DNA of 64,000 bases from the NCBI GenBank assembly GCA_002269645.1, contig NIVC01000290.1, forward strand, positions 84,178-148,177, given 5' to 3'. The DNA comes from Macrostomum lignano. Its lineage: Eukaryota. The position numbers and the translations under genes are program-made. The notes under the pieces were generated by a model. That model was not told the origin of the DNA. It was given only the letters and a program-made list of their open reading frames with translations, and ran no database searches. This document shows, piece after piece, positions 33,679 through 53,339 of this stretch (position 1 is its first letter; each line of letters begins with the position of its first letter).

Positions 33679-34188
33679 GGGTCGCTTTCACAAACCCTAA
33701 ATTTCACGTCGCAAGACAAACTTTTGTAAGCTCTAAACTTCATAAACCCTATATTTCACGTCGAAAAGTTGTGCACACTATTTCACAAGCCCTAAATTTC
33801 ACAACGCCTAAAACCACTATGGAGATACAATCTTTCTACAATCTTCTGTATCTCCATAGTGTTTTTAGGCGTTGTGAAATTCTGTGCATGCCTTTTAGGT
33901 GTTATGAAATTTAGGGCTTGTGAAATTCTGTGCATGCCTTTTAGGTGTTATGAAATTTAGGGCTTGTGAAATTCTGTGCATGCCTTTTAGGTGTTATGAA
34001 ATTTAGGGCTTGTGAAATTCTGTGCATGCCTTTTAGGTGTTATGAAATTTAGGGCTTGTGAAATTTAGGTTGTGAAATCTGCTGCATTGCTTATTTTCGA
34101 CGTTGTGAAAATTAGAATTTATGGAATATAGGTCTTATGAAAGGTTCTGGTTCTGACGTTGTGAAAATTAGGGTTTGTGAAACGACCC
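33679..34188. mobile_element. Foldback-like MITE (about 510 bp) with modular TIRs, central hairpin and internal 46-bp tandem repeat
   Basis: Left end GGGTCGCTTTCACAAACCCTAAATTTCAC matches the reverse complement of right end GTGAAAATTAGGGTTTGTGAAACGACCC. Inner inverted repeat ATTTCACAACGCCTAAAA(C/A)CACTATGGAGATACA at about 33795-33880. Four 46-bp units at 33882-34070. TSD is not clean. Confidence 0.75.
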
Positions 34189-36755
34189 TCTTGCTTACGT
34201 ATGCGCGCGGAGAGTGTATTTCGCAGAGCGTAAAAAGGTGAAGCGTAGAATGGGGATACAAAGAGCCTTATAGTAGGCAAGAGCGGTATGAGTCTTTGTT
34301 CCCCCTAGCCCTCAGACACGCAGATCCCACAGAGGGTGAGTCAACCAATTGGGGCTTGGCCAAGGATTTCTCTATAACTTTAGAATTAGATAAAATTCGT
34401 GTAAAACTAGTTTTGTGGGGAATACTGGGCTAGAATAACGCTCGTTGGTGGGCCTAAGTTGGTACGAAAAAAACTAAGAATTATTTTAGCGTAGAAGCTG
34501 CAATCAAAGAAACAGTTAAACAGATTGATAAAATGACACGTTAGCAAAATATAGTTAGTGCGCAAGCACTGAAAGTGTTTACATAAATGCAGTAAAATCA
34601 CATGCAATCCTGCTCAAAAGTTTATTTTGAGTTTATGTAACAAACGGTATGCGTAAAATTGCTAGTCTAGTTAATAGAAGTCTCAGACAGCTCAGCAAAG
34701 ACGTCACTTGTTGAGCACGGGAACCACAGATGTCGCAGAACTCTAAAAGTGCAAAGAGAATGAGCAAGTTGTGCAATGATCAAAGACAATCACTAATTGG
34801 CGATACTAAAAAACTGATGTTCGAAAAGCAAAATCAGCAGGCATTAGCTATGCAACAGCGGCCACAATAGGTTAAGCTGGCTTCAGTCGGCACTTCCTAT
34901 TACCAAGGTTCATCATTAATAATTGTTTACAACTTCATCCCAGTTGGATCACTGACAGGTAAAACATGAATGCACGATTTGCAATAATTACTTACCAGTT
35001 ACTGGAATCCAGCAGGTCATGACTGGATTATCTGGAAAATAAGCAGTCAGTGAATGCACTATCAATGCAGCAGTGAAGATTAGCGATTTACATATGATAA
35101 AAGCTTAAAGTAGTATAAATAGTTGTATCAGATGGCAATTATATGCAACAGCTGCCACAATAGAGTAACTGGCTTCAGTCGGCACTTCCTATTACCAAGG
35201 CTCATCATTAACTGGCTTCGATCGGACTGCATAATACAGTAACTACAATTATTTTATTACTCATACTTACAATAATAAATACAACAATCACTTACCAGTG
35301 CAATGGATCTGCCAAAAAGGATTCGAACTGGGCTGCAACTATCCCAGATACTCAGACTGGACTGCCATCTTCAGATATACTGGCTGTAAAATCTAAAAAG
35401 AAATACAAAAATAAATGAAAAATCAGTTACAGCATTAAACTGGCACAATAAGTCAATTTTATACTTTAGTCTTTAAGAATCTATATCAGATGGCAATTAT
35501 ATGCAACAAGTGCCACAATAGAATAACTGGCTTCAGTCGGCACTTCCTATTACCAAGGCTCATCATAAAATAACCTAGTGATTTCTTGCATGTTTATCTA
35601 AGTGAAACTATAGGTACTATATAATAAACAAGATAAAGTAAAAATCAACCTAAACTTACCAAAAAAGCTGTACATCTTAATACTCTTAATAGCCAAGTAA
35701 CTTCTTGTCAAGTTGACTGAATTGGTTATTATTAGCAGCAGATCTTGAGTTGAAAATGTGCAGAAATAAAAATGAAACAAACAAATAGAAAACCAATTGC
35801 CATTATAAAAATGCTACAAAAATAAGATGTTGTTTTGTTTGAATCTATGCTAACATATATAGGCCTATTCAAATGTCTAATCCTAAATTTAAATTTAATA
35901 TTTTCGAAAATATCCCAATAATGAATAAGATTTGTACAATGGTCAATAGAATGCAAATATTCAAATATTTTCCAAATTAAATAATCTGAGTAGACCCCCT
36001 AGCCCTACTAATACTAATAGGCAAAATATGTAGAAGCAGTTATAGTCTCTTAGAAGGCTAGTTTTAGATTCATATGAAAATTATATATTATTGTTTAACT
36101 TTGCAAAATGTTTTCAGTATACAATCTTTGTTATAAGTATACCCAAAAGTTTAGTATAAATATAAGCTACGTTTGAGGAGGAAAAGCAACTTATTCATTT
36201 GTGAAAGCTCAAGCTTAACCATTAAACTTGTTCACTAAATTCATTTTCAGATTTATAAAGTGTAAATCATTTTGCAGTAAAAATCCTAAGTGTTAAGAAA
36301 GATTTGCTAAAGGAAAGAAACTAGGAGCACATGTAAAAGGGATACTAAAAGTAATACTATGACCTTTAAATCTTACTAATGCCCAGACTAGAGAATAGGA
36401 ATTCCAGTTTTTTGCCCCCAAACTGTTTTGGCCATGGACATTTCGCCTCCAGACCATTTTGCCCATAAACCAGTTTGGCTATAGGCTTGGCCAAAATGGT
36501 GATTATGTAATTTAGAGATACAGCCATACATATATCTTTCTTTTCTTTTTTAATGCTATTTTTTAGTTTTAATGTATAAAAATGATGATCTAAATTGTTG
36601 CTACAACAATTGTGTTATTGCAATTTTGTTTATTATGATACAAATTATTACAAGTTTTTAAAAGGGGTCTCCCTAAAACACACCCCATACTACCCTGCAG
36701 TGCTATACATTAAAACAAATTGGACTATAACTGAAGACATTTCAAAATGCATTTA

Positions 36756-37425
36756 CAAGGACCACTAGAAGTTACCATTGTATCAGGACATAAAACTTGT
36801 AAATATTGTAAAATTATTTGAGGGCCCACTTGTTTGCATGTATTTATCAGTACTTGCTTTCAAAAAAGCATCTACTTGACTTGAGTCAACTGTTTTAAAG
36901 AAGCATGCACTATATTTGAGCCTAAGAAGCTGCATATAATATGTGTATTTATAGTTTATTTAGGCTATAATCAAGATATTTTGAGTAATTATATCATTAT
37001 ATGCAACTTGTTTGAATATTTCCTAAGGTTTTATGCAGACAGCAGATACTGCTAGTAGGCCCTAATAGCACTATGAATTCGACAAAGCTTGAGAAAAGCA
37101 TTAGAAGGGCTTCTAACTAACTTACTATCAACCAGAAAGTAATTTAACCAATAGGTCTATATTTTTTATAACTTATAAGCTTAGCCTTTACACTTTAGCT
37201 AGCTATGACAGTTAGGCTATCATGACATTAGGGTAGGGATATCATACTAAAACTCCAACAGCTACTAGGCTTACACCTAGGCCTACCATGATTATTAGGC
37301 CTAGTTATTATTATTATTAGGCCTACTATTATTATTACTGGAGACTAGGACTAATTCATGCACTCATGCTTAATATTAGTATAGACAAGTTTAAAATATG
37401 ATAGTTTATTTGTTTTTAATGTATA
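36756..37425 (+). mobile_element. Older truncated copy of the P-element 5' end (inverted relative to 45650-46328)
   Basis: Starts CAAGGACCACTAGAAGTTACC and aligns over about 670 bp to the reverse complement of the right end of the 39928-46328 element, with scattered substitutions. No partner TIR or matching TSD was found. Confidence 0.8.
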
Positions 37426-38273
37426 TAATGTTTATTTGTTACCTTTTAATGTATATAAAGGTAAAGAACATTTTAAAGGTAGAAACAAACTGGTAGTTAT
37501 AATAAATAATAGTAAGATTTTAATAAGTCAAGATTAGGCCTATTTATAAAAACATTACAAAAATGTATCTTACTAATGGTCTTTGACTTTAGCCAAATAT
37601 ATTATAACCTACAAAATATTAACAATTGAAGATATAAAGTGTTTTTAACTTTGAATATTTGCAATTACAATTTGCAATTACAATATATTAGTATAAGGTC
37701 TGCCTAGGCACCACACTCTAGATCATGTAATATATATTGAAAATTTAGATATACATTGGCTTTGCACTTTTAAAATTCTTATTGGTAGTCTTACCCCTAC
37801 TAATAGGCCATAGTACTTTTATAGACAATATAGCTATAATAACCCCCACTCTTGTATCTTATATATATATATATACACTAGAAAACTCTAGTATACAACA
37901 GACTAGAAAAAATGGTTGACAAAAAGTATCTAGCAATAAAAAAATCTACTAGAAAATTATGCTACAGAACTAATATATGGGTATTTCTTTTTAATGACAG
38001 TCGTGACTATGGTGTCTAATTTAGTGAATAAAATTGCCTAATTGTTACAGGTGACTCTAAAAATGGCTTACCATCAATATATAGGAAGCTATATGTCAGA
38101 TTACAAGGCTTACTCTCCTACATACTGTCTAGCAAATTTTTTATTAAAGAAAGATAGACGTGATGGTTGTGATGTATAGAAATTCACATTGTGTAGGAAA
38201 AAATGTTTGTTGCATTTTTTCATCAAAAAGATGACAGAATTTGCAATGCATGGCACTATTTATTATTAAGAAT

Positions 38274-38550
38274 CCTGATTGCAGCGCATGGGCATTTTGG
38301 CGGACGGCGTCCGGCGCGGATCTAATACGGCGCGGCGCGGCGCATACGCGCGCGGCGATTAGTACGGCGCGGCGCAGTACTAATTAGATGCCGAGGCATT
38401 TAGGCTTGATAAGACAGTCATAGTTACTCCTGCCGTTTACCCAAAACTGCGTTAACTTTGCTTTAGGTTTCTTTCACAGGTAAGTCATTTCACAGCGTGG
38501 CGCAGGTTGTGTAGGCGTCTGGCGTACTTAAGCCATGCGCTGCAATAGGG
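38274..38550. mobile_element. 277-bp TIR element (piggyBac- or hAT-like MITE) carrying a 28S rRNA fragment
   Basis: 18-bp TIRs CC(TG/CT)ATTGCAGCGCATGG with 2 mismatches. TTAAGAAT on both sides (38266-38273, 38551-38558). Internal 28S-like segment. Confidence 0.75.
38379..38442 (-). other. 64-bp degenerate fragment of eukaryotic 28S rRNA (R2/I-PpoI/Pokey target region); not an rRNA gene
   Basis: Minus strand GGGTAAACGGCAGGAGTAACTATGACTGTCTTATCAAGCCTAAATGCCTCGGCATCTAATTAGT versus the recalled conserved 28S GGGTAAACGGCGGGAGTAACTATGACTCTCTTAAGGTAGCCAAATGCCTCGTCATCTAATTAGT. About 57 of 64 positions match by hand alignment. Confidence 0.85.
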
Positions 38551-39037
38551 TTAAGAATGAGTAGCACTTTGACTGTTGAGAAGCATTATAGCATTAGACA
38601 TGTGCATTAACCAAAAAAATCTAACTTGTTTAAACTGACAGTTGTACCATGATGGTTGTGACATTTCAGAATTTTAACAAAAATCGTTACTTTTTGTATA
38701 AGAAACCGTGTAAAATATTGATTGTGGCACTTTATTTGTCTAAGTACTTACACATCAATGATTATTCTACTTCTTTATTTCAGATTCGATCATGCTCTGG
38801 CCATCATTCTGCAGTGCTGGGCAATAATGGTACCGGCCTGATGACAACAGAGGTAAAGCTGACTGACATTAAGATATTGCATTGATTGAAATATATTGTG
38901 AACAATTTGGATACTTACAAATTACTCATATTGACTGACAGCAAAAGCAACCTTCAACAATGGGCTAATTTGGCTTGCATTTGTTTTTTTTGTAGCCAGT
39001 GAGTGATGCATGTGAGCAGTGTACCAGTACTTAAAGT

Positions 39038-39469
39038 TCAAAGATTGGAAAACTTGAAGTGGCCTCGTGCATCCACTGGTTCAGGAGGCGTAATTTTGCA
39101 CAGGACATCACTTTCCTGGTAGTAAATTGCATCCTTTCTTTTGGGCCAGATATAGTGCAGTGGCCCTCGCTTGTTCATTACATTCACTTTGAAGTGACGC
39201 GAACCATCGTCATCAATGACCTTTGTGACCTGCTCAGGGTACTGCTGCTCATTGTACACAACTAGCACCCAATCACCAACGATTACTTGGGCGAGAGAGG
39301 CTTGTAGATTGTTTGATGGCTCTAGCTGCTCCCTCAGTTGTTCAGGCTCTCTTTCGGGCTGCACAGCAACTGCAGGGGTAGGAATGTCAGTCACCGAATA
39401 GGGTGAGCAGAAGACATTAGGTTGCGTTACATCAGTACACCAGAAGTGTTGGCCTTTGATGCCTGGTAC
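39038..39469 (-). pseudogene. Terminal exon of a DNA-transposon-associated ORF (VPG..H motif plus Tudor/SH3-like domain; possibly Sola2-like)
   Basis: Acceptor at 39470-39471, then VPGIKGQHFW..GDWVLVVY..QYPEQV..VNVM..WPKRKDAIYY..ITPP..RGHFKF. I recognise this pattern from C-termini of invertebrate transposase-like proteins. The superfamily is tentative. Confidence 0.5.
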
Positions 39470-39927
39470 CTACATGTAAAAAAGATTTGATAATGCATTG
39501 AGTTCTCTGCTGCTGTTTTCACCATGGCTGATCAGCTAGAATCAGTGGCTGAAATGATCAGTTCTAGAATGAGAAATGATACCTAGGCCTAGCTCAAAAA
39601 CATTGATTGCAAATCTGTAATTACATAACACAATTCTTTTGTTAAAAAAACAAATTTTTCAATACCTTGGGGATGCTGGCTACGCTTAAATGATGGTCGT
39701 GACATGATGGTTGCACTTATCTTTGATGCTTTTTTTCCAATGAAAGGATGACTCTATATTAATAATTTTTAATAATTGTCTAACTATTAATGAACTAAAT
39801 ACAATTGAATTGTTTTGATAAGAACTGATTTCCCGATTTATCCAAGACAAAACTATATTGATGTAAAATCTGATGGTTGCACTTTTACACTGCTGCAACT
39901 TTGTTAGTGTTCCCCACAACATACAAT

Positions 39928-42900
39928 CAAGGACCACTAGAAGTTACCGTTGTATCAGGACGCAACACTCGTAAATATTGCAAAATTATTTGAAGGCCCG
40001 CTTGTTTGCATTGCAGCTTAACTTTAAATGCTCATAACTCCGGACTGGTTGCACTTTGAAAGATAATTTTTTCGCCAGGTTGCTCGAAATTTTGTTCTCT
40101 TAAACATATAACAAACTTTAGCGCTATATCTACATGTAGGAGCGGCGGGCGTACAGTAAAGTAACGGCAATACACAATATTTCATTGCATACAAAATGAA
40201 TAAAGTTTCAGTTACTTCAATTATTGCCTCCTAGTCTCGATAAAGTAGCAGACCATACAACATACTCTGTAGTTGGAAGCTTTATAAAGCGGATAATCTG
40301 TACAGAGTTCAGTGGGCTGCAAAGGCGTCACTTCACTATCAAAAACCAGTATTATAAAAATCAGAAAGGCGCAGTATTTTTGAAATCTTGGCACACCTGC
40401 CCAACAAGAACTCCAACATTCATAATCTTTCTTTTGCTGTTCAAATGAACAGTAGGAGTCAAATAAAACTTGTACAGTAGCACAACTTTATTTGTATTTA
40501 AGTTCAATTTCGATATAAAAACCTCTAATTTCATAAAGAATACATGCGAAATAAGAAAACAAAGTCAAAAAGCAACAATAAGCCAATGTATTTTAAACTT
40601 AAACTTTCATACCAATCAAGTCATTCTGTCTAAAAAATCTCTTAAAATCACAAAGCATAATGAATCACAGTACTTCACCATGTTAGCTCAGCAGACATTG
40701 ATGGATGAACATCTAGATTGGATGATTTGGCACACCTGAAATGAAACCAATTTGGGATTAATAAATACCTGCTTTGCAATGAACAACAAAACAAGCCTTG
40801 TTTTGAGTAAATGAATACATTTTCTCTATAACCTAATATGTATGAAACAAAGCTTAAACCATCAAATCACAGCTGGTTTAACTAACATGAAACTGACAAA
40901 CTAACAAATTAAAGTACATTGAATATGGATATAAAGGTAATGATAATAAGAAACTGTAGTTAAACTAAACAAACATCTCAACCGTCAATCTGCAACATTT
41001 TTAAACAATATGGTTCATAAAATAATTGTCAATGACAAGACTAACAACCTACTTATTGCACTGATGAAAAACAAGATAAGGTTTACAATCTTGTATAAAG
41101 ATAGTTAGAACAATAGCTTTAGATAAGTCTATAAATGGTATACATCCGGCTATATAGAATTGTCTTAGGCCTAATAAATAAGGAAAGAGAATTATACACA
41201 TTTAGACTTCAAAGTATATTCAATTGTGAATTTATATACTCTAATATATTGCTGTATTGACAACAAAAAACTATAACAAACTATAAGCCATGTTGCTAGG
41301 AATGCTAGTTAAACAAACAAATAAATCTTACACATTGTTTACACATTGTCTATAACACTGTGTAAAACTATATTTGTCTTTAGACTAAAATGTTTTTTTC
41401 CTATTTGTCATTCTAATGTATAGTAAAAAATAGTACTCCTTTACCCTTGACTTCAGTTTTGAACATATAACTTCAGCTTAGTGAAATGATATAATTAATC
41501 TAATCCAAATCAAATCTAATCTAATTCTATAATTCTATTCAGTATAGCAAAAATGAGTGTCTTGTTCTAAAGTGGTATTGGTAAATGATTTACTTAAACA
41601 GCATAGCTCAACCAATTTTGAAGCATTTAACTTCACTTAGCTATAAAATCAACAATCAGGTAACTAGAATACAAAAAAATAATCAACAGACTTATTAATG
41701 ACTTTTAAAAACAATTTTTGCATGTAAAGGGTAATAGATGCCTACAAAATTATAAACAAAACTGTACATTTGACAAAACTGTCAACAATTTTCTAACAAA
41801 CAGTAGAATGTTAGCCTGTAAGTAATTAAATAGATGCCTACAAAAATATGAACAAAACTGTACATTTGACAAAACTGTCAACAACTTTCTAACAAACAGT
41901 AGAATGTTATCCTGTAAGTAATTAAATAGATGCCTCCAAAAATATGAACAAAACTGTTCAAACTTTTTAATAGACTCAACTAACTTAAGCAAACTTAAAT
42001 TGATACAAAAGCTTGCAATAAATTATAGCTATCCCCAAAGTATATAAAAAATTCATGGGCTTCAAGAAATACATCTGAGTATGCCAGCAATTGGTCAACT
42101 AGCCAGAGTGTGATAATAAAGAATGTAGCAAATCATTCATGTTGTAGTTTACGTAGTCTACGTCCATTGGCATTGAAAGTATGCCGAGGTATCTCTGATG
42201 ACTTACGCACTAGGCCTTTGAAAAAAGTATTTGCAAGCCGGCGAGCAATAGATGATAGTTGATCCTTTTGAATATCAAAGTCAACAAGTGACTCAAAAGT
42301 ATATAGAAAAAGGCGAATTGTATGGCTGGCACACTTCAGTGACATCATACCAAAGAGTGAGTAGCACATTGATGCATAGACAATTAGCCATTCAGGAGGA
42401 TGTTGCAATTTTCCTCTAGATAAAAGGTTAGTAAACTCACTATCTGGTGCCTGTACAGTTTGAGCAGGAAATACTTCAGGCACTTCTAAGGACTCCTTCA
42501 TTGAAATATAGCCGCAGATATAATACAGAGTTACTCTTTCATCCAGTGATACCTCTTCAATTTGGCCTGGCAAATTATCAATTAACTCAATCTCTTCAAA
42601 TGACATTGTGCCAGTACAACAGCTGTCTTGTGCTTGGCAGTTCATAGATGGTGCATCAATTTGCAGGTCTGCATACAGTTGCATTCTTCGTAGGCGGGCT
42701 GAGAGCATTATCTGCTCAACTGATATATAATAGCAGCCCCCATGTCCTTGTCTGTAAATAGAAAATTCTCCTTCAAGTCTGTCTGATTGAAGCTCACCTA
42801 GAGAATGTGTATAAATAAAAATTAAATGACTCACTTACTTTGAAAAGGTACTTTTATCTAAATCAACTTTCACTACTTACTGGTATACACTTATTCTTAC

Positions 42901-45900
42901 CTAATAACACATAGGAAAATTTACAGTCTTTTAGTAAATATCTGCTCAGTTCAACCAGCCCTTTTGATGTCTGTATAGCAGCCTTGCGAGTTTCTGAAGT
43001 AAGCGATCATAAACGTCCAGGTCCTCGACCTCCAGGCATCCGTTCTAATACTTCGGCAAACATACTTAGTAACTTAAGATTGCTTGACTCTTCAGAGAAA
43101 ATTGGACTACGTGTATCATCATGCAGCTGCATATGAGATGTTGTTGATTTTACATTAACCACTTTCCAAAACTTAAGGATAAAATCTATAAAAGTGGCTG
43201 TACCATAAAACCCATGAAGTTGAAGAGCAGCAATTGTCTTTTCATTAAAAACTTGAAGAACTAAAGATACCTTCTGACGTTCCAATGGAGATGGATGGCA
43301 TGATTGTGGACTAAGTGTTGTAGGTCGAACAACATGAAGCTGTGATTTCTGCTCAATATCTATAATATCATTCCAATTAGCTTGACAAATAGGCCCTTCT
43401 GGTAAAAGTTGAAAGTCAATAATCTTTGAGCCTTGAGTATACCAATTATTGCGAATGTTTTTCAATAGATGAACTGTGTCATATAATAGAAACAAAGGTA
43501 GGCTTTGATCTACTGGGTTAATTGCCTTCCAGGGTGCATCCATGTTGTCAAACTGAAACTTCTGGTAGCAGATACGGTTGATGAAATGATTGTCACAAAT
43601 AAGACTTACAACCTGCCCATTGCATTGATGAATAACCCTAATTAGTTTTACAATTTGTTGGAACAAGAAGTTGGGTTTTAAACTATAAACAGGAATCAGC
43701 CTAGCCACAAATGATTGGGCTCCCATGAATGGTTTTATCATTAAGGCTAGGATAGTACGAGCCAATTGTGTTGGTACATCCTCAGCATAGCCAACTGTAT
43801 GTCCACCTCGGAAACGAGCTGATGGTAAAACGTATACTTCATCAAAAATAACAGTACACAACTTCTGTGACGGAGTCAGTTGGCCAAAATGTGTGCTCAC
43901 AATGGTCTTACAATCTAAGTCTGTTCCAACATTACCAAGACCACCAAGATGACGCTTTAGAGTTGTAGCATGCGGTAGAGTCATAAGGTGCCTTGCTGAC
44001 CGATAAGCATTAGTGCCAGATAGGAAGATCTTCATGGCTGTTAAAATGTCTGATGAATTATAATAGTGCCCATTTGATGATAAGGACAATTCCAGTTGAC
44101 GAAGAAGAAACAGTTGCTTGGAGCTACATGGTAACTTTCGAATGGTTGCCACACTAGACTTGATCTCATCACTAATTGTCAATGGGGCCTGTTTGACCCT
44201 ATTGACAATAGCTTCAAGTTGACTAAAGCGTTCTAGTTTCCATTGAAATCCTAGGAGGTCAGTTACCTTGACAACACTGTTCTGTCGATAGGCTTCAACA
44301 GTGAAGTCACTATTAACACAGATATAGAATTCAACTGCACGTTCAAATATGGTCAAGAACAAAACATTCGAATCCGAAACTTGCACAAGCCAGCCAACTA
44401 AGAAGGGAAGAGCTAAAGCAGCAACTTGGAAAGCATTCCACGAACAGATTCGATCGGCTTTGTTAAATGCAGGCATTTGATCTGGTTCTTGACCACGCTG
44501 TGACAGGGAAATGCCTCTTTTAACAGCCTGCCTTGACTTCTCTAAAAATATTTTTGAATTACAAACAACAACACATTATAAAAGGCAATCCAACTTTACC
44601 TGAGCTATAGGTTATATAACATGCTATATGATAGGGCATATTGTTAACTTACTTGGATATGTTTGGCGCATATCACTTTTCTTAGCAAATTGAAAAATAG
44701 AAGGTGGGTCCTAGGTCTTGTGAACCGCTTGACTTTTACCATGGGGGCATCATCTTCCCAATGCTTTCGGCAAATGCCCATGAACTTAGAGACATTCTAC
44801 AATTTATATATAAACTTTAGAAAGTTAATTATTTTTACTATACATTTTAATTATTCAAAAATTATATTGATCTCAATTATTTACTTTTAAAGAATAAAGT
44901 AACTCATTAAAAGGTCATTTTATTCACCTTAATAGACGATGGCAATGCATTAATCCATCGGCAATGCTCAGCCTCATCTTTAGGAAAGCCAAATATAGCT
45001 ACCTTCTCTTCATTGCGATAGTTACTTCTACAAGATGGTATGCAACATTTCATGGGCATGGTTTGATAATTTTTTGTGAGTACACTGAAATTGTTAGATT
45101 TAAAAACCAAAAAATTGAAACATTTCAGTTATCTCACTTTACATTTTAAAATATTAGACCCAAAACATAAACTATGAAAAAACAAATGAAAGCCAAAAAG
45201 GGTTTTAATAAGTGAATAACTGTGTATTATATTAATGCACAGATTTGAAAGTGAACACAAACTGGTAATAAAAGAAAAACAAATAAAAAAGTAGCAGAAA
45301 TATTTTTTCTTCTAAAAAAACACCAATATTAATAAATAAAGGCCTTTTAAAAAATTGTACCTAACACAATTGAAAAGCTGCTATTTGACATTAAAAATAG
45401 GTGCTGCAAATGTCTTCAAGACAGTAATACATTACAATATTATTACACTGATAAAAATTGGAAAAAATAGTGTTTTCAACACAAAAATAAATAGGCCTAA
45501 AGAAATTGAAAAGCCAGTATAATAAACTTTAGCCTTGTTGTTTCTAGTGGGAAACCAACTTTTAATATGCTAAAATATGTCTGCTACAAAAGGACAAAAG
45601 AATAAAAAGCATAGGTTAGTTAGCTAAAGCAACATCTTATTGGTTGGATACATTAAAAACAAATAAACTATCATTTAACTTGTCTGATACTAACATCAAG
45701 CATGAGTACATGAATTAGTCCTAGTCTTCAGTAATAATAATAATAGGCCTAATAATAATATTAATAATAATAATAACTAGGCCTAATAATCATGGTAGGC
45801 CTAGGCATAGGCCTAGTAGCTGTTGGAGTTTCAGTATGATAGGCCTAATGTCATATGATAGCCTGTCATAGCTAGCTAAAGTGTAAAGGCTAAGCTTATA

Positions 45901-46328
45901 AGTTATAAAATAATATAGACCTACTGGTTAAATTACTTTCTGGTTGATAGTAAGTTAGTTAGAAGCCCTTCTGATCCTTTGACCTTTTCTCAAGCTTTGT
46001 TGAATTCTCAGTACTATGACTAGCAGTATCTGCTGTCTGCATAAAACCATAGGGGGCCTAGGAAATATTAAAACGAGTTGCATTTAATGATATAATTACT
46101 CAAAATATCTAGATTACAGCCTAAATAAACTATAAATACACATATTATATGAAGCTTCTGAGGCTCAAATGTAGTGTATGCTTCTTTAAAACAGTCGACT
46201 TAAGTCGAGTAGATGCTTTTTTGAAGGCAAGTACCGATAAATACACGTAAACAAGCGGGCCTTCAAATAATTTTACAATATTTACGAGTGTTGCGTCCTG
46301 ATACAACGGTAACTTCTAGTGGTCCTTG
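39928..46328 (-). mobile_element. Full-length P-superfamily (THAP9-like) DNA transposon, 6401 bp
   Basis: 80-bp TIRs (CAAGGACCACTAGAAG...GCTTGTTT, 1 mismatch). Perfect 8-bp TSD CATACAAT at 39920-39927 and 46329-46336. Internal THAP-transposase. Confidence 0.93.
42133..45059 (-). pseudogene. THAP-domain P-element transposase, 4 exons (44928-45059, 44653-44796, 42901-44541, 42133-42797), disrupted
   Basis: THAP C2CH (CCIPSC..FGFP..W..ICRKHW..PPSIF). Catalytic motifs IFDE, CDN, YDTVHLLKNIRNNW and QSDRLEGEFSIYRQ. Lesions: frameshift near 44712, TGA at 43007-43009, extra A near 42925-42930. Confidence 0.88.
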
Positions 46329-48356
46329 CATACAATTTTAAGTTCTAGTCAAGAAAAAAGAAATCAAGGCACTAATATAATGGTTCTGTTTAAAAAAACA
46401 TGTTTTGGGCTATATAAAAGACACTATTTCATTATATTTTGGCAATTGCAAAAAACAACAAACATTGTATTACTCTGGGCATACATGGGTGATAATATTA
46501 GAAGTCAAATTTTGTGCATATAATTAACTTTTCTAACTAAAAATATAATGAAAATCAAAGGACCAAAACTTTTACTTTATACAAGCTCCAAAAACATACT
46601 GTAATAATTTTCTTTTTTTCCTAGCCCAGTGTTACACCTTCAAAAAATACCTATATGGCATAGTTGTTGACATACAAAAGACCAAAATGTTATAATGCAA
46701 GAAGGGTCCTATATTATTGCAATAAAAAAAGGACTTCAATTAGGCCCTATGTTCTTATTCAATTATGTCCAATGTATAGGCCTAGCCCTATATCACAAGT
46801 AAATTTGTTTTTCTAATATAAATTTGAATTTATGGCATACAGACACAGTGTACACTTATTTTTTCTAGCATACCATGTGTTAGACTTAAGTGTGATAATA
46901 AACCACAATATTATTATTAGATAATTAGGTCATTGTCATTACTAACCATAGTCCATATACTAGACTATAGCTATAGTAATATATAAGCCCCTGGCTATCT
47001 TGTGTTGATGTACTAGGCCTATAATAGGCCTAGTTTTAGTTTATAAAATGCCTAATGTATAGACATTAGAACATTTCAAAAAGTAGGGGGCAGATATCAT
47101 TGATGCTCCTGCCCCTTCTTACTTTAAAAGTGGCGCAGTGGGGGCATGCCCCCTCCCCTCATTCTTCTGATACCTAAAATTGATTAGTATAACAATTTTA
47201 CTAATTAAATTAGCACTCTTTTGGGAGAAACATATATCGAAACTTGCTCAGCCCCCCATTCCGACGCCTATGGGCTGATAGGCCTATTCCGAGTTTTGAC
47301 TGGCTGGACTTAATCGATTGAGGAAATAAGATTAAGCATGAAAGGGATTGATGGCAATAGCCAAAACCAATAGGACGGCAGGTCAGACAACGAGACAGGG
47401 TCTATTTTTTAGTATTAGATGTATTAACAATTAAAAAACTAGACGAGATTAAGACTTCACTCGACTCAGACATCAGACTTCACAGCAGAGTCACACGCAC
47501 TCCAAAACACACGCTCGAGAGGAGGTCCACGTACGTCGAAACGAGCAGCGTCGTGCAGTTCAAATTTACTGAATTGCAACTTTCAATTTGCTCAAAGTAA
47601 ATATCAAAATGTACGGTAAAACAATAGCATCAAGGCCATTTTATATTTGTAAAGTACTAACAAACTAATTTTTTTGTTATTTTTTTTAATATTTTCTTAT
47701 ATTCCTTTAAAAATCATAAAAGTGCTGCTATTCAATCCCCCTTGTTAAAGGACTTTTTTAAAATATTTTTTTTCTTAGAATCGATCGGTTTAACCACGAT
47801 GACTGAGAGAACTTCCTGAAAAAATTACAGTTTGTCTTCTTTGTTGATTTTTCTATGTAATGAATATAGTTTTTTGCTAGCTTGTAAAGGAAAAGTTTAA
47901 GAAGTTTCGTTTTTTGCTTTGGCTGTTGCCTGCTTTAAATTTATATATATAATATATTGAAATTTAATTGATAGAATTTTGATAGAATCACAAAAGCAAC
48001 TTGTCACCGAAACGACTATTTGTCATCGAAACGTCTGTCACCGAAACGACTTGTCACCGAAACGACTGGTACCCATTGGAATGAGTCTAGCCAAAATCAC
48101 ACTTTCAGCCAGGATTCACGTCAGAGAGGACAGAGACATAAATCCATCTCCGATGGTAGCGATGGAAGCAAAATGCAAAGGCAAAAAAATCCCCCCCTTT
48201 AGAGGGAACGCATCTGGGACTCTGGATGTCCCCAGTGTCCCTCTTGGCTGCACACTATGAATCACACCTCTATAACAGCCAAGGCGAATACTTTCATAAA
48301 TATTGTACTTTATTCCTTGTTTATAACACCTGTATATTTGTTCTTTAGAAAGCCAA

Positions 48357-50785
48357 CTAGCAATCTAGCGCCCCCCTTCGGGGTGGCCAATAAGCAAGGG
48401 ACGAATCCTTTAAAATGAAAAGAATTCTTAGGGAGGGGGCTAGGAATCGAATTCTCATTTTAATTCCGGCCCTGGGCTTATGTACCAATAAAACATGCTT
48501 GTGTAGAATTAAAAAAACTGACAATTCAACCTACTTGCCTTCTTTCAGAGCAATAGCGTACTACTTCTGTTGCGGTGCAAGCATTACGCTCTGCAACGGC
48601 TGGAAAAGCAACTACAGCTAAAAAATTTTGTTTCCCAAAGGCCAAAGGCAACAGTTGCCTATCATGTAGGGAGTCACTGGCGTTGCACCAATTTTAATGA
48701 TGTCTGCTCTTAACTGTTTTAACGGTTACATACAAACATTGTGTCGACAATGTTATTGTATTTGGAGCCAGTGTGGTTATTTGATAGTGGATATTGCCTA
48801 GTACAATGACGTATAATTAATTGGTTTGACTTGCTAAAAGTATTGTTTCCGTAATTTAGATTTTGTAATTTTGTACTTTTAAAATTGCAAATCAAATACC
48901 AATATTTTCCCACAGCCTAATTTCCTTTTAGCTACAGTTCTTTTTTGCAGTTTTCATGTGCTCCTAACCCTTTTAATCTTTATTCTCTCATACGGTAATT
49001 AAAACGAAATTTTATTTTAAGTCACTCGCCACTCAACTCTAGTAAGTTATTTTACGACTTTTGTTTGACCCATTTTGCAAATCATGCATACAACTTTGAA
49101 ATACATGGATTCACAGCTCTGGTTAACTGATGCAATATATCTGTGCGACTCCTACACTAAATTCTTCATCGACATATTCAACTCCACTTGATTAATTCCT
49201 TAACTGCGAAACAAGTGTGTGATTAATGTATAGATTTTTAACGTAATAAAAACGAACCTGTGCTTGGGCCGCTTTCACTCTCATTACCCCAGATAATAGG
49301 GAATAGGGGGCATAAGCCAGTGTACTTAGCATGTACTGCGCTTTGGAAAAAATTCGACATCGTTGGCGCCCCAGTAAAGAGGCTTGTTAAAAAATTCTCA
49401 ACCAAACTTTTCTAGCTGCCTGACAAGACTGTACTATCATATACGCCTACCCATTCCCCCAGGGGGACACACCAGTGTACTTAGCAACGTACAGTGTCGG
49501 AATAACTTCTTCATTTGCGCCCCAGCCGGTGGAGAGGGGCGCAGTCAGTCATTAGCGGAAACAAGTACAACAAAGTACCATATATACTACGCTCATAACT
49601 ACATATACTTAAAGTACATGTAAAACACTGCAACCTGCTGCTACCATATTGATCACACACCCAGACCTGTACATTTGAAGCAATCTAACTAACAAAAAAT
49701 CAGAATGGCTGACAATAAATATTTAAGTATATAAAATTTTCATTCTTCTTGACAGTCACAAATTAGAGAGCAGTCTTTCATTAATTAGTACTCAATAATC
49801 CTTTCCTCTGCGTATTCAGACGAAAACAAGAAAAACTCTGCACTGTAATGTTAATAGCAAATTTAAAAACGCAATCAAATGCAAGTAGTCATTTTATTTA
49901 CTCCGTATATTTACAATTGCAAAGTCATAAAAGGATAAGAACTAAGATGTTTTTGCAGAAGGCTTCGCCAACAAGATGGTACCATAGCACAAATTCTGTT
50001 ACGAATTTTTCATTGGTGTCAATCTTTCCACTTGTTGGCTTGCTTTAGTCTGCACAGCTGGACAGAGACATTCACTTGGGGCATGTAAATTTCAGGCATT
50101 ACTAATGAGCATGTAAGAATAGTTTGCAACCCTCCTCTTTTTGCAACCAGGCTTAGGACTGGCTTCGGCAGAGTTAAAGCCATCACAACAGACTATCTGG
50201 GGTTTGCAAAGGCTGCTTCAAACCCCCTCTGGCTGCATTTGCATGCACGAGGGCCATTCCAAAAGTTCATGCAATCAGAAAATTTCTCCCACCACAAAAA
50301 GCTGCCAATTTGAGCTTCTCTCACCGCACTATTAGACTCTCTGGCCGAACCCCTCAGCAGAATATGGACAGGATTCTTACTGAACTATCAAGACTGTCTC
50401 TGGCTCAACCCCTCAATCAGAAAATGAATCAGAATTTAATTTAAATCAAGTCTAGTGCTACGCTTCCACACTGCATTTTCAATTCAAGTCGGAGTTACAA
50501 TTCAGTTATGATGCAATCTATTTTAGAATCAGAATTCAACCAGTCAGTTTGTTCTCTAGCATTCTTACAATGCATTTCAAGTCGAAAAGTTTGCTTGACC
50601 TTTGCAAAAAAGCATGTTTTTCAAATATTTAATGCCTTTAGCATCGAGCAATTTCTTAGCCACGATGCATGTACCGTCACGGGAAAATTTCTGATCGAAC
50701 AGTGCAAGTTCGAACAAAATCGGTCCAGCCATTTTTTCTCTAATCGATCACATAGACACAGACAGACCATTTTTAGTATATTGGA
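48357..50785 (-). mobile_element. Non-autonomous Helitron (about 2.4 kb)
   Basis: Minus-strand 5' end TCCAATATACTAAAAATGG at 50785. 3' hairpin CACCCC-GAA-GGGGGG followed by GATTGCTAG ending at 48357, then T. Its 5' about 350 bp is homologous to 60540-60906. Confidence 0.75.
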
Positions 50786-50929
50786 CTAGCAATCTTCGCC
50801 CCCCGTTGGGGGACATCTGTATAGAATCTCTGTTCTCTACAAGTAACAAAAAGACAGCCAAATAAAGCCTTCACAAAGACAACAGACAAACTGCTCAAAT
50901 AAAGTGTAATGCAAAAAGAAATCATCCCA

Positions 50930-52190
50930 AGACAGCAAGCATCCCCCAGATAGCAAGCATCCCCCAAATAGCAAGCATCCCCCAGATAGCAAGCATCCCC
51001 CAGATAGCAAGCATCCCCAAATAGTAAGCATCCACCAGACAATAAGTAGCTAGTGCCACAATTTCCTTAGCTCTATAGTGGCTCCTTTAAAATTGGCATG
51101 ACGCTTACTTTTACGTTTGAAATTGTGTATCTTTTATGTTTGACATGGTGGCTCTTTTATGTTTGACATGGTGGCTCTTTTATGTTTGACATAGTGGCTC
51201 TTTAGTGTTTGACATGATGGCTCTTTAATGTTCGACATGGTGGCTCTTTAATGTTTGACATGGTGGCTCTTTAATGTTCGACATGGTGGCTCTTTAATGT
51301 TAGACATGGTGGCTCTTTAATTTTTGACATGGTGGCTATTTAATGTTTGACATGGAGTCACATATATGTTGGACATGGTGGCTCTTTTATGATTGACATG
51401 GTGGCTCTTTAATGTTTGACCTGGTGGCACCTCAATGTAATGATGGCTCTTTAATGTTTGAAATGGTGGCTCTTTAATGTTCGACATGGTGGCTCTATAA
51501 TCTTCGACATGGTGGCTCTTTAATGTTCGATATGGTGGCTCTTTAATGTTAGACATGGTGGCTCTTTAATGCTCGACATGGTGGTCCTTTTATGCTTCAC
51601 ATGGTGGCTCTTAAATGTTTGACATGTTGGTCCTTTTATGTTTGACATGGTGGCTCTTTAATGTTTGACATGGTGGCTCTTTTATGTTTGACATAATGGC
51701 TCTTTAATGTTCTACATGGTGGCTTTTTTATTTTTGACATGGTGGCTCTTTTTTAATGTTTGGCATGGTGGCTCTTTAATGTTCGACATGGTGGCTCTTT
51801 AATGTTAGACATGGTGGCTCTTTAATTTTTGACATGGTGGCTATTTAATGTTTGACATGGAGTCACATATATGTTGGACATGGTGGCTCTTTTATGATTG
51901 ACATGGTGGCTCTTTAATGTTTGACCTGGTGGCACCTCAATGTAATGATGGCTCTTTAATGTTTGAAATGGTGGCTCTTGTTCGACATGGTGGCTCTATA
52001 ATCTTCGACATGGTGGCTCTTTAATGTTCGATATGGTGGTCCTTTTATGCTTGACATTGTGGCTCTTTAATGTTTGACATGTTGGTCCTATTATGTTTGA
52101 CATGGTGGCTCTTTAATGTTTGGCATGGTGGCTCTTTAATGTTTGACATGGTGGCTCTTTAATGTTAGACATGGTGGCTCTTTAATTTTT
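50930..52190. repeat. Helitron-internal satellites: 18-bp (TAGCAAGCATCCCCCAGA, 50930-51040) and 23-bp (CATGGTGGCTCTTTAATGTTTGA, 51130-52190)
   Basis: Directly visible. The same two arrays recur at 61085-63770. Confidence 0.92.
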
Positions 52191-53339
52191 AACGTTTGTT
52201 AAACGTTTTGTTAAACGTTTTTGACGTTTGTAACGCAAGAATTTTTTGTATTTTTTCGCGAATAAACTTGAAAAGTACAAAGTTAAAACTTATGAACATG
52301 GCATTAAAAGTACAACCGATATGTCACGTATACATAGCGTGTGCAATGGCTGCATGTGACCAGATGAGTTCCTTTAATACTCTACGTTAGTCTATAGTCG
52401 CAGCCCTCGGATTCGCTCATTCCTGCCCTCAAATCCATAGTCAGAACAATCAGTTCGGCTCTATTTCCTTAGCCTTTGCGCTTTGCCACAGACTATTCAT
52501 ATTTGTTTCGCCAAAGATTAAGAAATGAAGTAAGACAAAAGCTTCATTCAGGGCCTTCGCCTTAGTTAAAATTGACATCTTGTGAGTTTCGTATATTATT
52601 CAACTTTCAATATATGGAAGACGAAGGCCCCGTCGCAAGTTGATGCAAATCGTTTTTTATGAGCTTACAGTCCACAGTTGTCACAGGTGACTTGATCGAG
52701 ATATTTTTGATTTTTGAAAAAAAGACTGTCACTCGTAGTTTGCGTAAAAATCCATATACTAAAATTCACTCTAATGTTAAGTTTTTGCGAACCTTGGAAA
52801 ACTAAAAACAAAATTGTTTCGTCTTTTGCATAAATTTGCGATATAAAATAAGTAAAGTTTTTACACGAATTATAATGAAATTTCAGGTGAAAAATAAAAG
52901 ACAAAATTAACTGCTCATCAAAGATTGAATTCATTAAAAGCAGTGCAAAAGAAGGTTTGTTTCAAAAGTTACTTTCGGCTAATATGAAATTGCCTTAAAA
53001 TACAAATTAACTGTAAAGTGCAAATTGACTGTAAAAATTAATACAATGAATAAAATAAGCCTAATTGAGCTTCAACATAAAGTTCATCAGCTATTAGCTC
53101 GTACTCACTGCCATGCAATATCTACGCTTCGTTAGAAATGAGGTTGGGGCAATAAGTTTCCTGCGATTCTTTTAGGAATGAGAGCTATTGACAGCTATTG
53201 CTTTAGAGAATGAGAGCTATTACTTAAGAGATATGGGGAAATAATTATTCTATTTTTCCTTAAAAATAAATGAATATACTTTCTAGCCTTTTGCATAAGG
53301 AAAATTATTGCTCACCCCTCATTTTTTACGATAAATAAA

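What the first reader, a model, noticed from the sequence alone, without database searches (positions are those of the whole stretch)
38274..38550. TIR-bounded mini-transposon carrying a copy of the 28S rRNA R2/Pokey/I-PpoI target with the cut site altered
Seen: a 277-bp element with 18-bp TIRs and identical TTAAGAAT flanks. Its right end reads TTAA|CCCT, a piggyBac-style terminus. Inside is a 64-bp stretch matching eukaryotic 28S rRNA at about 57 of 64 positions, and most differences cluster where TTAAGGTAGCC becomes TTATCAAGCC. Established: this 28S segment is the insertion or cleavage site of R2 retrotransposons, the I-PpoI homing endonuclease and Pokey (an rDNA-specific piggyBac of Daphnia that uses that TTAA). 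Inference: this may be a Pokey-like family that carries a non-cleavable copy of its own target. The copy could be a decoy, a homology or guide sequence for rDNA targeting, or a captured flank left by an insertion and excision in rDNA.
Basis: partly seen in the sequence, partly recalled or inferred. Interest (0 to 1): 0.85.

Follow-up and report, generated by a model that had tools for sequence, protein, structure and literature searches.

The report
Flatworm mini-transposon carrying a 28S fragment
A 277-bp non-coding mobile element in a Macrostomum flatworm genome carries a 71-base copy of the 28S rRNA stretch that R2, Pokey and I-PpoI cut, mutated at the cut point; most likely a passenger, but other copies could not be checked.

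Summary
Window 38274-38550 is a GC- and CpG-rich 277-bp insert in AT-rich DNA. It has 18-bp terminal inverted repeats (16/18, 14 perfect) and identical 8-bp flanks TTAAGAAT. On the minus strand it holds a 71-73-nt copy of eukaryotic 28S rRNA (Infernal 38.3 bits, E=1.7e-8; 57/64 as reported). This copy spans -36 to +35 around the R2 nick site, and AGGT is replaced by TCA exactly there.

The window is from Macrostomum lignano or a close relative. This copy lies in an intergenic cluster of transposons, not in rDNA.

The piggyBac/Pokey assignment is not established. The duplication is 8 bp, and only the right end reads TTAA|CCCT. The termini also fail the hAT consensus and do not match the P-like element nearby.

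The 28S piece ends in a snap-back palindrome followed by echo repeats, which fits filler DNA made by template switching. My best reading is a young MITE-like element with a passively captured rDNA fragment.

The centring on the cleavage site, and the damage at it, leave open an endonuclease-scar or target-mimic reading. No other family copy could be retrieved, so the decisive family-level tests remain undone.

The parts
38266..38273 (.). Left copy of the 8-bp direct repeat TTAAGAAT (target-site duplication)
   Evidence: Identical to 38551-38558. None of 139 chance inverted-repeat pairs had a direct repeat longer than 6 bp.
38274..38291 (+). Left terminal inverted repeat CCTGATTGCAGCGCATGG
   Evidence: pair I2: 14 nt, 100% complementary; 16/18 when extended to the ends.
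38323..38338 (+). First copy of the GC-rich direct repeat TAATACGGCGCGGCGC. It is either an echo of the end of the 28S piece or a subterminal binding repeat.
   Evidence: D6, 94% to 38360-38375; D1 family also at 38327, 38364 and 38492.
38358..38384 (.). 13-bp-stem palindrome ATTAGTACGGCGC-G-GCGCAGTACTAAT. Its right arm is the last 13 nt of the 28S-like piece and its left arm is the inverted copy.
   Evidence: I10, 92% complementary, 1-nt loop. Its centre, 38371, coincides with the end of the 28S homology at 38372.
38372..38442 (-). 28S rRNA-derived segment, 71 nt, matching Rfam LSU_rRNA_eukarya positions 2244-2314. It spans -36 to +35 around the R2 first-strand nick (TTAAGG^TAGCC).
Evidence: The R2Bm 60-bp target and its nick position are in PMC13000458.
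38402..38412 (-). Altered core. 28S TTAAGGTAGCC-A reads TTATCAAGCCTA, so AGGT is replaced by TCA and one T is inserted. This removes the Pokey/I-PpoI TTAA and the R2 GG^TA nick site.
   Evidence: The I-PpoI site CTCTCTTAAGGTAGC occurs in I-PpoI papers such as PMC3597653 and PMC2602781 (full-text match; papers not opened).
38492..38505 (+). Third, diverged copy of the ACGGCGCGGCGCAG motif, near the right end
   Evidence: D1, 86%.
38533..38550 (-). Right terminal inverted repeat (reads CCCTATTGCAGCGCATGG inward), abutting TTAA
38551..38558 (.). Right copy of the 8-bp direct repeat TTAAGAAT

Best explanation
This is a recent insertion of a short, non-autonomous cut-and-paste DNA transposon (MITE-like) in the genome of the flatworm Macrostomum lignano or a close relative.

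How it moves (inferred): a transposase encoded elsewhere binds the 18-bp terminal inverted repeats, and perhaps the GC-rich ACGGCGCGGCGC repeats. It excises the 277-bp unit and inserts it at a staggered cut, which produced the 8-bp duplication TTAAGAAT.

The 28S piece: the 71-nt segment in the middle is a passenger. It was copied from rDNA or rRNA into the founder of the family as filler DNA, during error-prone repair with template switching. The strand copied 28S up to ...TAGTACTGCGC, snapped back on itself to make the 13-bp palindrome, and re-copied the same short motif 37 nt further on.

The altered core: AGGT to TCA is most simply one complex indel. It came either from that copying event or from later mis-repair of a break at this site. 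It is not a designed feature.

Shown: insert boundaries, TIR, TSD, rDNA origin and extent of the piece, palindrome at its end, and its non-rDNA location.

Inferred: trans-mobilisation, filler-DNA origin, passenger status.

The superfamily is unresolved. The 8-bp duplication argues for a family that duplicates 8 bp. The right end alone looks like piggyBac.
For: - TIR plus 8-bp TSD are far beyond chance.
- GC and CpG change sharply at exactly these boundaries, CpG o/e 1.44 against 0.48-0.68, and the TSD is perfect. This indicates a young insert.
- No ORF inside the element exceeds 38 aa.
- The 28S homology is highly significant and sharply bounded.
- The piece ends exactly at the centre of a 12/13 palindrome, followed by a 15/16 direct echo.
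- Two rRNA helices in the piece are broken by uncompensated changes, so there is no selection for rRNA-like folding.
- The whole element folds only modestly better than shuffles (z = -2.0), mostly through its TIRs.
- The surroundings are a transposon cluster, not rDNA: a P-like element at 39928-46328, a solo P-like end at 36756-37424, and a Helitron.
- Transposons holding rDNA-derived pieces are a documented class: Pokey IGS/ITS2 repeats, SINE28, 5S-SINEs (PMC10946416; PMC3849761).
Against: - Only one copy was seen. Multi-copy status, the family consensus and the TSD rule are untested.
- A random 71-nt capture from a 28S of roughly 3.4-4 kb would be centred within a few nt of the R2 nick site with probability of a few per thousand. 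The densest cluster of changes also sits on that site.
- The GC-rich repeats could be transposase-binding sites rather than template-switch echoes.
- The termini fit no 8-bp-TSD superfamily consensus that I could test. They are not hAT YARNG and do not match the neighbouring P-like TIR.
Confidence: 0.55

Rival explanations
1. Endonuclease scar or escape. The MITE-borne 28S piece is an ectopic copy of the target of R2 or of an I-PpoI-like homing endonuclease. It was cut at the core and mis-joined (4 nt lost, 3 nt added). Alternatively, only copies with a destroyed core survive without an R2 insertion. The altered core would then be a consequence of the site's biology, on top of a passive capture.
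For: - The piece spans -36 to +35 and covers 53 of the 60 bp of the R2Bm in-vitro target (PMC13000458).
- The AGGT to TCA change lies exactly across the R2 GG^TA nick and the I-PpoI TTAA^GG cut.
- A small deletion with a short insertion is a typical end-joining scar (established knowledge).
- R2 occurs in flatworms, in Schmidtea and Schistosoma (PMC3581529).
Against: - R2 was not shown in Macrostomum here.
- The clustering of changes is not significant alone (P=0.13).
- Five further edits lie outside the core.
- With a single copy, a family-wide change cannot be told from a private one.
Confidence: 0.2
2. The element belongs to a Pokey-like piggyBac family that targets the 28S TTAA site. It carries a deliberately non-cleavable copy of its own target, serving as decoy, guide or homology arm.
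For: - The right end reads TTAA|CCCT, a piggyBac-type terminus.
- The 28S piece is centred on the Pokey TTAA / R2 site and lies near the middle of the element.
- Pokey shows that an rDNA-specific piggyBac can hold rDNA-derived sequence (PMC3849761).
Against: - The duplication is 8 bp. The left TTAA is 4 nt from the TIR and the left terminus is CCTG.
- This copy is not in rDNA.
- No piggyBac transposase or second TTAACC...GGTTAA pair is in the window.
- Pokey's rDNA repeats are IGS/ITS2 and are absent from its MITEs.
- No DNA transposon is known to use internal homology for targeting (my own knowledge).
- The homology is short (71 nt) and about 14% diverged.
Confidence: 0.1
3. A MITE born from rDNA. 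The whole CpG-rich interior, not only the 71 nt, derives from M. lignano rDNA (spacer or expansion-segment sequence next to a rearranged 28S fragment). The TIRs arose by inverted duplication or by a transposon sitting in a dead rDNA unit.
For: - GC is 55% and CpG o/e 1.44 in a CpG-depleted genome region, an rDNA-like composition.
- The TIR contains GCGCATG, which also follows the captured stretch in real 28S (...GACGCGCATGAATGG; read from the sequence, weak).
Against: - Rfam finds no other rRNA similarity in the element.
- In real 28S the flanks of this stretch are conserved for at least 60 nt each side (PMC3581529), yet they are absent here.
- The 7-mer match is within chance.
Confidence: 0.1
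4. Not a mobile element. An inverted repeat and a direct repeat arose by chance around a fragment of rDNA that was inserted at a repaired chromosome break.
For: Only one copy was seen, and rRNA or rDNA fragments are known to be captured at breaks (established knowledge).
Against: The joint expectation of a perfect 14-nt inverted repeat with adjacent 8-bp direct repeats is far below 0.01 per window. The boundaries coincide with the compositional step.
Confidence: 0.03

Closest known systems
Pokey / mPok (piggyBac superfamily, Daphnia)
   Same: A DNA transposon family linked to the same 28S TTAA site. Autonomous Pokey holds rDNA-derived sequence, MITE derivatives exist, and copies also occur outside rDNA (PMC3849761). 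The right end here reads TTAA|CCCT.
   Different: - Pokey's rDNA pieces are IGS (about 200 bp) and ITS2 (about 50 bp) repeats in the 5' non-coding region of autonomous copies. mPok MITEs (about 750 bp) lack them.
- Here a 277-bp MITE holds 28S coding sequence, the target site itself.
- The duplication here is 8 bp, not TTAA.
- This copy is not in rDNA.
- The host is a flatworm, not a crustacean.
SINE28 and other rRNA-derived repeats (5S-SINEs, Cassandra/Ajax TRIMs)
   Same: Mobile elements whose body includes a fragment of an rRNA gene (PMC10946416).
   Different: Those are retroelements, and the 5S cases use the rRNA piece as a Pol III promoter. This one is TIR- and TSD-bounded (class II), and its 28S piece has no known promoter role.
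Internally deleted DNA transposons with filler DNA (Ds, P-element deletion derivatives, Pack-type capture)
   Same: A short non-autonomous element whose interior holds foreign host sequence with palindromic and repeated junction features, as expected from abortive gap repair with template switching (established knowledge; Pokey also acquires host DNA).
   Different: The captured piece is centred on a site-specific endonuclease target and is damaged at the cut point. Ordinary filler DNA does not predict this.
R2 target site / I-PpoI recognition site in 28S
   Same: The piece covers 53 of the 60 bp of the R2Bm in-vitro target and the whole 15-bp I-PpoI site region.
   Different: The core is changed from TTAAGGTAGCC to TTATCAAGCC, so neither the R2 nick dinucleotides nor the I-PpoI TTAA overhang remain. 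The copy is outside rDNA, inside a transposon.
MITEs resident in rDNA of Nosema bombycis (LSUME1 and others)
   Same: MITEs associated with rRNA genes (PMC10946416).
   Different: Those are MITEs inserted into rDNA. Here rDNA sequence is inside the MITE.

Membership tests
MITE (generic non-autonomous class II element) | Short (under about 800 bp), no coding capacity | tested here: met
   277 bp. The longest stop-free stretch inside is 37-38 aa. No protein match.
MITE (generic non-autonomous class II element) | Terminal inverted repeats flanked by a target-site duplication | tested here: met
   16/18 TIR and 8/8 direct repeat, beyond chance.
MITE (generic non-autonomous class II element) | Multiple dispersed copies in the genome | not testable with these tools
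   One copy in the 64-kb window. The M. lignano genome is not in any searchable collection. Scans gave only chance 19-mer hits. Look-ups found no contigs.
piggyBac superfamily | 4-bp TTAA duplication abutting both termini | tested here: inconclusive
   The right end is AGGG|TTAA. On the left the TTAA is separated from the TIR by GAAT. The identical flanks are 8 bp, TTAAGAAT. If GAAT belongs to the element, its match to the right flank would be a coincidence of under 1%.
piggyBac superfamily | Termini 5'-CCC...GGG-3' | tested here: not met
   The right end is CCCT. The left end is CCTG, or GAAT under the TTAA reading. The feature is met at one end only.
piggyBac superfamily | Autonomous partner with DDD transposase (Pfam DDE_Tnp_1_7) sharing the TIRs | not testable with these tools
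   None among the 34 window ORFs scanned. No other TTAACC...GGTTAA TIR pair in the window. The rest of the genome is unavailable.
Pokey family | Insertion at the specific TTAA of the 28S gene (as well as other TTAA sites) | tested here: not met
   This copy lies in AT-rich non-rDNA. Rfam finds no rRNA outside the element. Other copies could not be examined.
Pokey family | Sequence or ITR similarity to PokeyA/B | not tested
   The Pokey ITR sequences are in a figure not held by the tools.
hAT superfamily | 8-bp target duplication, consensus nTnnnnAn (Ac-type) | tested here: met
   TTAAGAAT is 8 bp with T at position 2 and A at position 7. The consensus is from my own knowledge. The chance of a fit in AT-rich DNA is about 0.13.
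hAT superfamily | Termini matching YARNG | tested here: not met
   The termini are CCTGA and CCCTA. Position 2 is C, not A, at both ends.
P superfamily | 8-bp duplication and TIRs related to a P-type autonomous element | tested here: not met
   The 8-bp TSD is met. The TIRs of the P-like element 4 kb away (CAAGGACCACTAG..., TSD CATACAAT) are unrelated to the MITE's TIR.
Transposons with rDNA-derived segments | Internal segment with significant similarity to an rRNA gene | tested here: met
   LSU_rRNA_eukarya 38.3 bits, E=1.7e-8. Alignment score 52 against a shuffle maximum of 18.

The most novel reading that the evidence does not exclude
The element represents a flatworm DNA-transposon family tied to the 28S R2/Pokey/I-PpoI hotspot. 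Every member would carry a centred, inactivated copy of that target site. The copy would be kept either as immunity against R2 or homing-endonuclease attack on an ectopic target, or as a decoy or tether acting on the rDNA-targeting machinery. That would be only the second rDNA-associated DNA transposon lineage after Pokey, and the first transposon known to carry a mimic of a site-specific element's target.
Probability: 0.1. Interest if true: 0.8.

Novelty: new variant of a known kind. Interest (0 to 1): 0.4.

Why it matters
DNA transposons linked to rDNA are very rare. Pokey is described as the only rDNA-specific one (PMC3849761). The review table of rDNA-derived transposon sequences, as far as I read it, lists only IGS for Pokey and mPok among DNA transposons (PMC10946416).

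A class II element holding the 28S coding stretch that R2, Pokey and I-PpoI all attack, centred on and damaged at the cut point, would matter in either of two ways:
- It could be a simple record of repair-mediated capture from rDNA or rRNA.
- It could be a first glimpse of interplay between a cut-and-paste element and site-specific rDNA parasites in flatworms.

If the family is multi-copy, its copies are natural ectopic R2 target sites. Their state (intact, scarred or R2-occupied) would directly show how strictly R2 is confined to rDNA. If it is a one-off passenger, it is an ordinary MITE.

Tried and rejected
1. Other copies in the window. TIR 14-mer with up to 2 mismatches, the 28S 15-mer, and sensitive blastn of the element against the window all returned only the element itself.

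2. Other copies elsewhere.
- Exact scans of metagenome, prokaryote-genome and viral contigs with the right-end 19-mer gave 9 hits. All were bare 19-mers in bacterial-type DNA with no second TIR.
- Two further viral scans (altered core; TIR..TIR) gave nothing.

3. A six-frame peptide query of the element against 5.8 billion proteins found nothing at E<=10.

4. Exact-protein look-ups meant to reach Macrostomum contigs or an empty homeologous site found nothing on record.

5. A literature search for the TIR and altered-core strings gave no paper. No paper on Macrostomum MITEs was found.

6. The idea that the flanks are an older, deaminated copy, prompted by a 12/14 TIR-like 14-mer at 38241-38254, was rejected. 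Purine/pyrimidine and nucleotide alignments of the element to the joined flanks were no better than shuffles.

7. The idea that the 28S homology extends 45 nt upstream, as in the first Infernal alignment, was rejected. That part costs about 17 bits and is not significant alone.

8. The idea that the neighbouring P-like transposon is the autonomous partner was rejected, because its TIRs are unrelated.

9. Origin from bacterial or organellar LSU rRNA was rejected. Among the LSU clan only the best match is kept, and that was the eukaryotic model.

Full report
**The object**

Window 38274-38550 is a 277-bp block. Its ends are CCTGATTGCAGCGCATGG and, read inward from the right, CCCTATTGCAGCGCATGG. 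That is 16/18, with a perfect 14-nt core. Immediately outside both ends lies TTAAGAAT (38266-73 and 38551-58). The direct repeat cannot be extended by a base in either direction.

In 300 block-shuffles of the window, a perfect 14-nt inverted pair within 1 kb arose 0.46 times per shuffle. None of those 139 chance pairs had an adjacent direct repeat longer than 6 bp. In the real window this is the only pair with an 8-bp repeat.

The block is 55% GC, against 27% and 41% in the adjacent kilobases. Its CpG observed/expected is 1.44, against 0.48-0.68 elsewhere in the window. The boundaries are therefore also compositional steps. The insert has not shared the CpG depletion of its surroundings, and with the perfect duplication this points to a young insertion.

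No stop-free stretch inside exceeds 38 codons. The structural part of the finding is confirmed: a MITE-like, TIR- and TSD-bounded insert.

**The 28S piece**

Infernal against Rfam matches the minus strand to LSU_rRNA_eukarya. The score is 21.6 bits for 38372-38486, but 38.3 bits (E=1.7e-8) when only 38372-38444 is offered. The 45 nt upstream therefore cost about 17 bits. On their own they are no better than shuffles (P=0.19), and downstream there is nothing.

A plain local alignment to the Rfam consensus scores 52, against 9.7 +/- 1.5 for shuffles.

The 28S sequence is conserved across metazoans for at least 60 nt on either side of the R2 site (PMC3581529). The sharp ends of the homology are therefore real ends of the captured piece. 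It is 71 nt long, GGGTAAACGG...TACTGCGC.

The oligonucleotides in PMC13000458 place the R2 first-strand nick between TTAAGG and TAGCC. The piece thus runs from -36 to +35 and includes 53 of the 60 bp of the R2Bm in-vitro target. The I-PpoI site string CTCTCTTAAGGTAGC (full-text match in I-PpoI papers) and the Pokey TTAA lie at its centre.

There are ten edit events relative to the consensus. Five lie within 11 nt: AGGT is replaced by TCA, and one T is inserted after AGCC.

**How unusual is the pattern?**

The clustering alone is unremarkable (P=0.13 by a scan statistic). More striking is that the piece is centred, to within a base or two, on the cleavage site, and that the cluster sits there too. 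A random 71-nt sample of a gene of roughly 3.4-4 kb would be so centred with probability of a few per thousand.

Two things temper this:
- The first-stage reader could only flag an rRNA fragment it recognised, and this is the best-known stretch of 28S.
- The piece also corresponds to a natural structural unit of the rRNA: the 3' strand of one helix, two hairpins and the linker between them (structure line).

I therefore treat the centring as a real but unexplained hint, not as proof of function.

**Signs of how the piece got there**

The 3' end of the 28S homology (38372) is exactly the centre of a 13-bp-stem palindrome, 38358-38370 / 38372-38384, with 12/13 pairs (I10). One arm is the last 13 nt of the 28S piece and the other is its inverted copy. 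Thirty-seven bases further on, the same 16-mer recurs at 15/16 (D6). A third, weaker copy of the motif lies near the other end (D1).

A snap-back followed by re-copying of a short template is what error-prone repair synthesis with template switching leaves behind. This is established knowledge for filler DNA in deletion derivatives of DNA transposons.

Inside the piece, helix GGGAGU/ACUCUC has two uncompensated mismatches. The second hairpin has one broken pair and one compensated pair. There is thus no sign of selection for rRNA-like folding.

Six of the seven substitutions are transversions, and there are at least three indels. This is an odd spectrum for slow neutral decay, but the numbers are small.

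As single-stranded DNA the whole element folds only modestly better than shuffles (z = -2.0). Most of that comes from the TIRs and this hairpin.

**Where it sits**

A GTPase ORF at 10306-12147 is 98% identical, over its matching quarter, to a UniRef protein of Macrostomum lignano. The window is from that flatworm or a close relative.

The left part of the window holds host genes: the GTPase, a Na/sulfate symporter fragment and a rhodopsin-type receptor. From about 33 kb on it is AT-rich and full of repeats. The element lies between two P-like features:
- a solo end of a P-like transposon at 36756-37424, 86% identical to the end of the full copy;
- a complete 6.4-kb P-like transposon at 39928-46328, with 80-nt TIRs, 8-bp duplication CATACAAT and a TNP-like RNase H ORF.

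A Helitron lies at about 53.3-58.9 kb. Rfam finds no rRNA anywhere else in the window. This copy is therefore not in rDNA.

**Which superfamily?**

The right junction, AGGG|TTAA, is textbook piggyBac. The left is not. The TIR starts CCTG and the nearest TTAA is 4 nt away.

Reading the duplication as TTAA requires two things: the element's first four bases (GAAT) must match the four bases after the right TTAA by chance (under 1%), and the left terminus must have lost its CCC. Reading it as 8 bp requires only that an 8-bp target happened to begin with TTAA in AT-rich DNA (about 2%) and that the termini resemble piggyBac by chance.

I favour the 8-bp reading, roughly 2:1, but a single copy cannot settle it.
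- Ac-type hAT: the target consensus nTnnnnAn fits, but the YARNG terminus does not.
- P-type: the neighbouring P-like TIR (CAAGGACC...) is unrelated.
- piggyBac or hAT partner: the window has no such transposase, and no other TTAACC...GGTTAA pair.

**Attempts to see the family**

This is the test the finding needs, and I could not do it.
- The window holds no second copy.
- The searchable DNA collections hold no Macrostomum. Exact scans with the right-end 19-mer returned nine chance hits in prokaryote-type contigs with no second TIR. Further viral scans returned nothing.
- A concatenated six-frame peptide query found no protein at E<=10.
- Exact look-ups of neighbouring ORFs, and of the M. lignano GTPase itself, found no contig.
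- No paper contains the TIR or altered-core strings.

**Comparison with what is known**

Pokey is the obvious comparison. It is a piggyBac element that inserts at this very TTAA, also lives elsewhere in the genome, has MITE derivatives, and carries rDNA-derived repeats (PMC3849761).

Those repeats, however, are IGS and ITS2 sequence in the 5' non-coding region of autonomous copies. The authors stress that the mPok MITEs lack them. The review of rDNA-transposon interplay lists 28S-derived sequence only for the SINE28 retroelement. Among the DNA-transposon rows I read, it lists only Pokey's IGS (PMC10946416).

A class II MITE holding 28S coding sequence, and specifically the hotspot site, is thus a new variant of a known kind. 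It is not a member of Pokey on present evidence.

**Verdict**

The most likely account (0.55) is a young, trans-mobilised MITE whose founder picked up a short 28S fragment as repair filler. The altered core would be one complex indel.

An endonuclease scar or escape at an ectopic R2/I-PpoI-type target is a serious second reading (0.2) and could coexist with the first.

The family-level BLAST against the M. lignano genome would decide among these within minutes.

Noticed in passing
window 39928-46328: A complete P-like (THAP9/TNP-type) DNA transposon, 6.4 kb. It has 80-nt TIRs at 99% identity starting CAAGGACCACTAG and an 8-bp duplication CATACAAT. Its ORFs of 489 aa (TNP-like RNase H N-terminal domain) and 233 aa lie on the minus strand. 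It looks recently active.
   Followed up: partly
window 36756-37424: A solo end of an older copy of the same P-like family. Its TIR has 1 mismatch, and about 625 bp are 86% identical to 46284-45648. The flank differs and no partner end is seen. The MITE lies 850 bp beyond the end of the detectable similarity.
   Followed up: partly
window 50126-50180 (-): A twister-P1 ribozyme-like sequence: 41 bits (gathering score 67.2), E=1.6e-7 in a 700-nt search. The outer stems and the conserved core nucleotides are kept and one internal stem-loop is deleted. Twister ribozymes are reported to be abundant in Schistosoma (my own knowledge).
   Followed up: partly
window 34856-35570 (-): Three weak SNORD49-like C/D-box hits (23.5-25 bits, E 0.13-0.34), spaced about 300-400 bp apart in AT-rich DNA. 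They may be a dispersed or tandem repeat rather than snoRNA genes.
   Followed up: no
window 33686-34169: A 46-bp tandem array (4.4 copies, 98% identity, 33864-34065). Inverted copies of the same unit lie just upstream (33686-33800), giving many perfect 14-mer inverted pairs.
   Followed up: no
window 51108-52190: A minisatellite of a 23-bp unit CTTTTATGTTTGACATGGTGGCT, about 47 copies at 81% identity. It lies between the twister-like sequence and the Helitron.
   Followed up: no
window 53340-58896 (-): Helitron remnants: a Helitron_like_N Rep domain (E=3.6e-46) and PIF1 helicase / Pif1 2B domains, split over several ORFs. The coding region is therefore broken by stops or frameshifts, or by introns.
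   Followed up: no
window 38241-38254: A TIR-like 14-mer, TTGCAATGCATGGC, lies 20 bp upstream of the MITE in the orientation of the left TIR. It matches the TIR core at 12/14, and both differences are transitions. Alignment of the element to the joined flanks gave no support for an older decayed copy, so it is probably chance.
   Followed up: yes
window 38407-38413 (+): The altered 28S core reads TGATAAG on the plus strand, which fits the WGATAR GATA-factor motif. A 6-7-mer match is easily chance, so it is noted only.
   Followed up: no
window 6000-33000 against 34000-53000: Strong compositional contrast: 47-63% GC with overlapping long ORFs in all frames at 10-18 kb, against 29-40% GC in the repeat-rich half. 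CpG is depleted in both (o/e 0.68 and 0.48).
   Followed up: no
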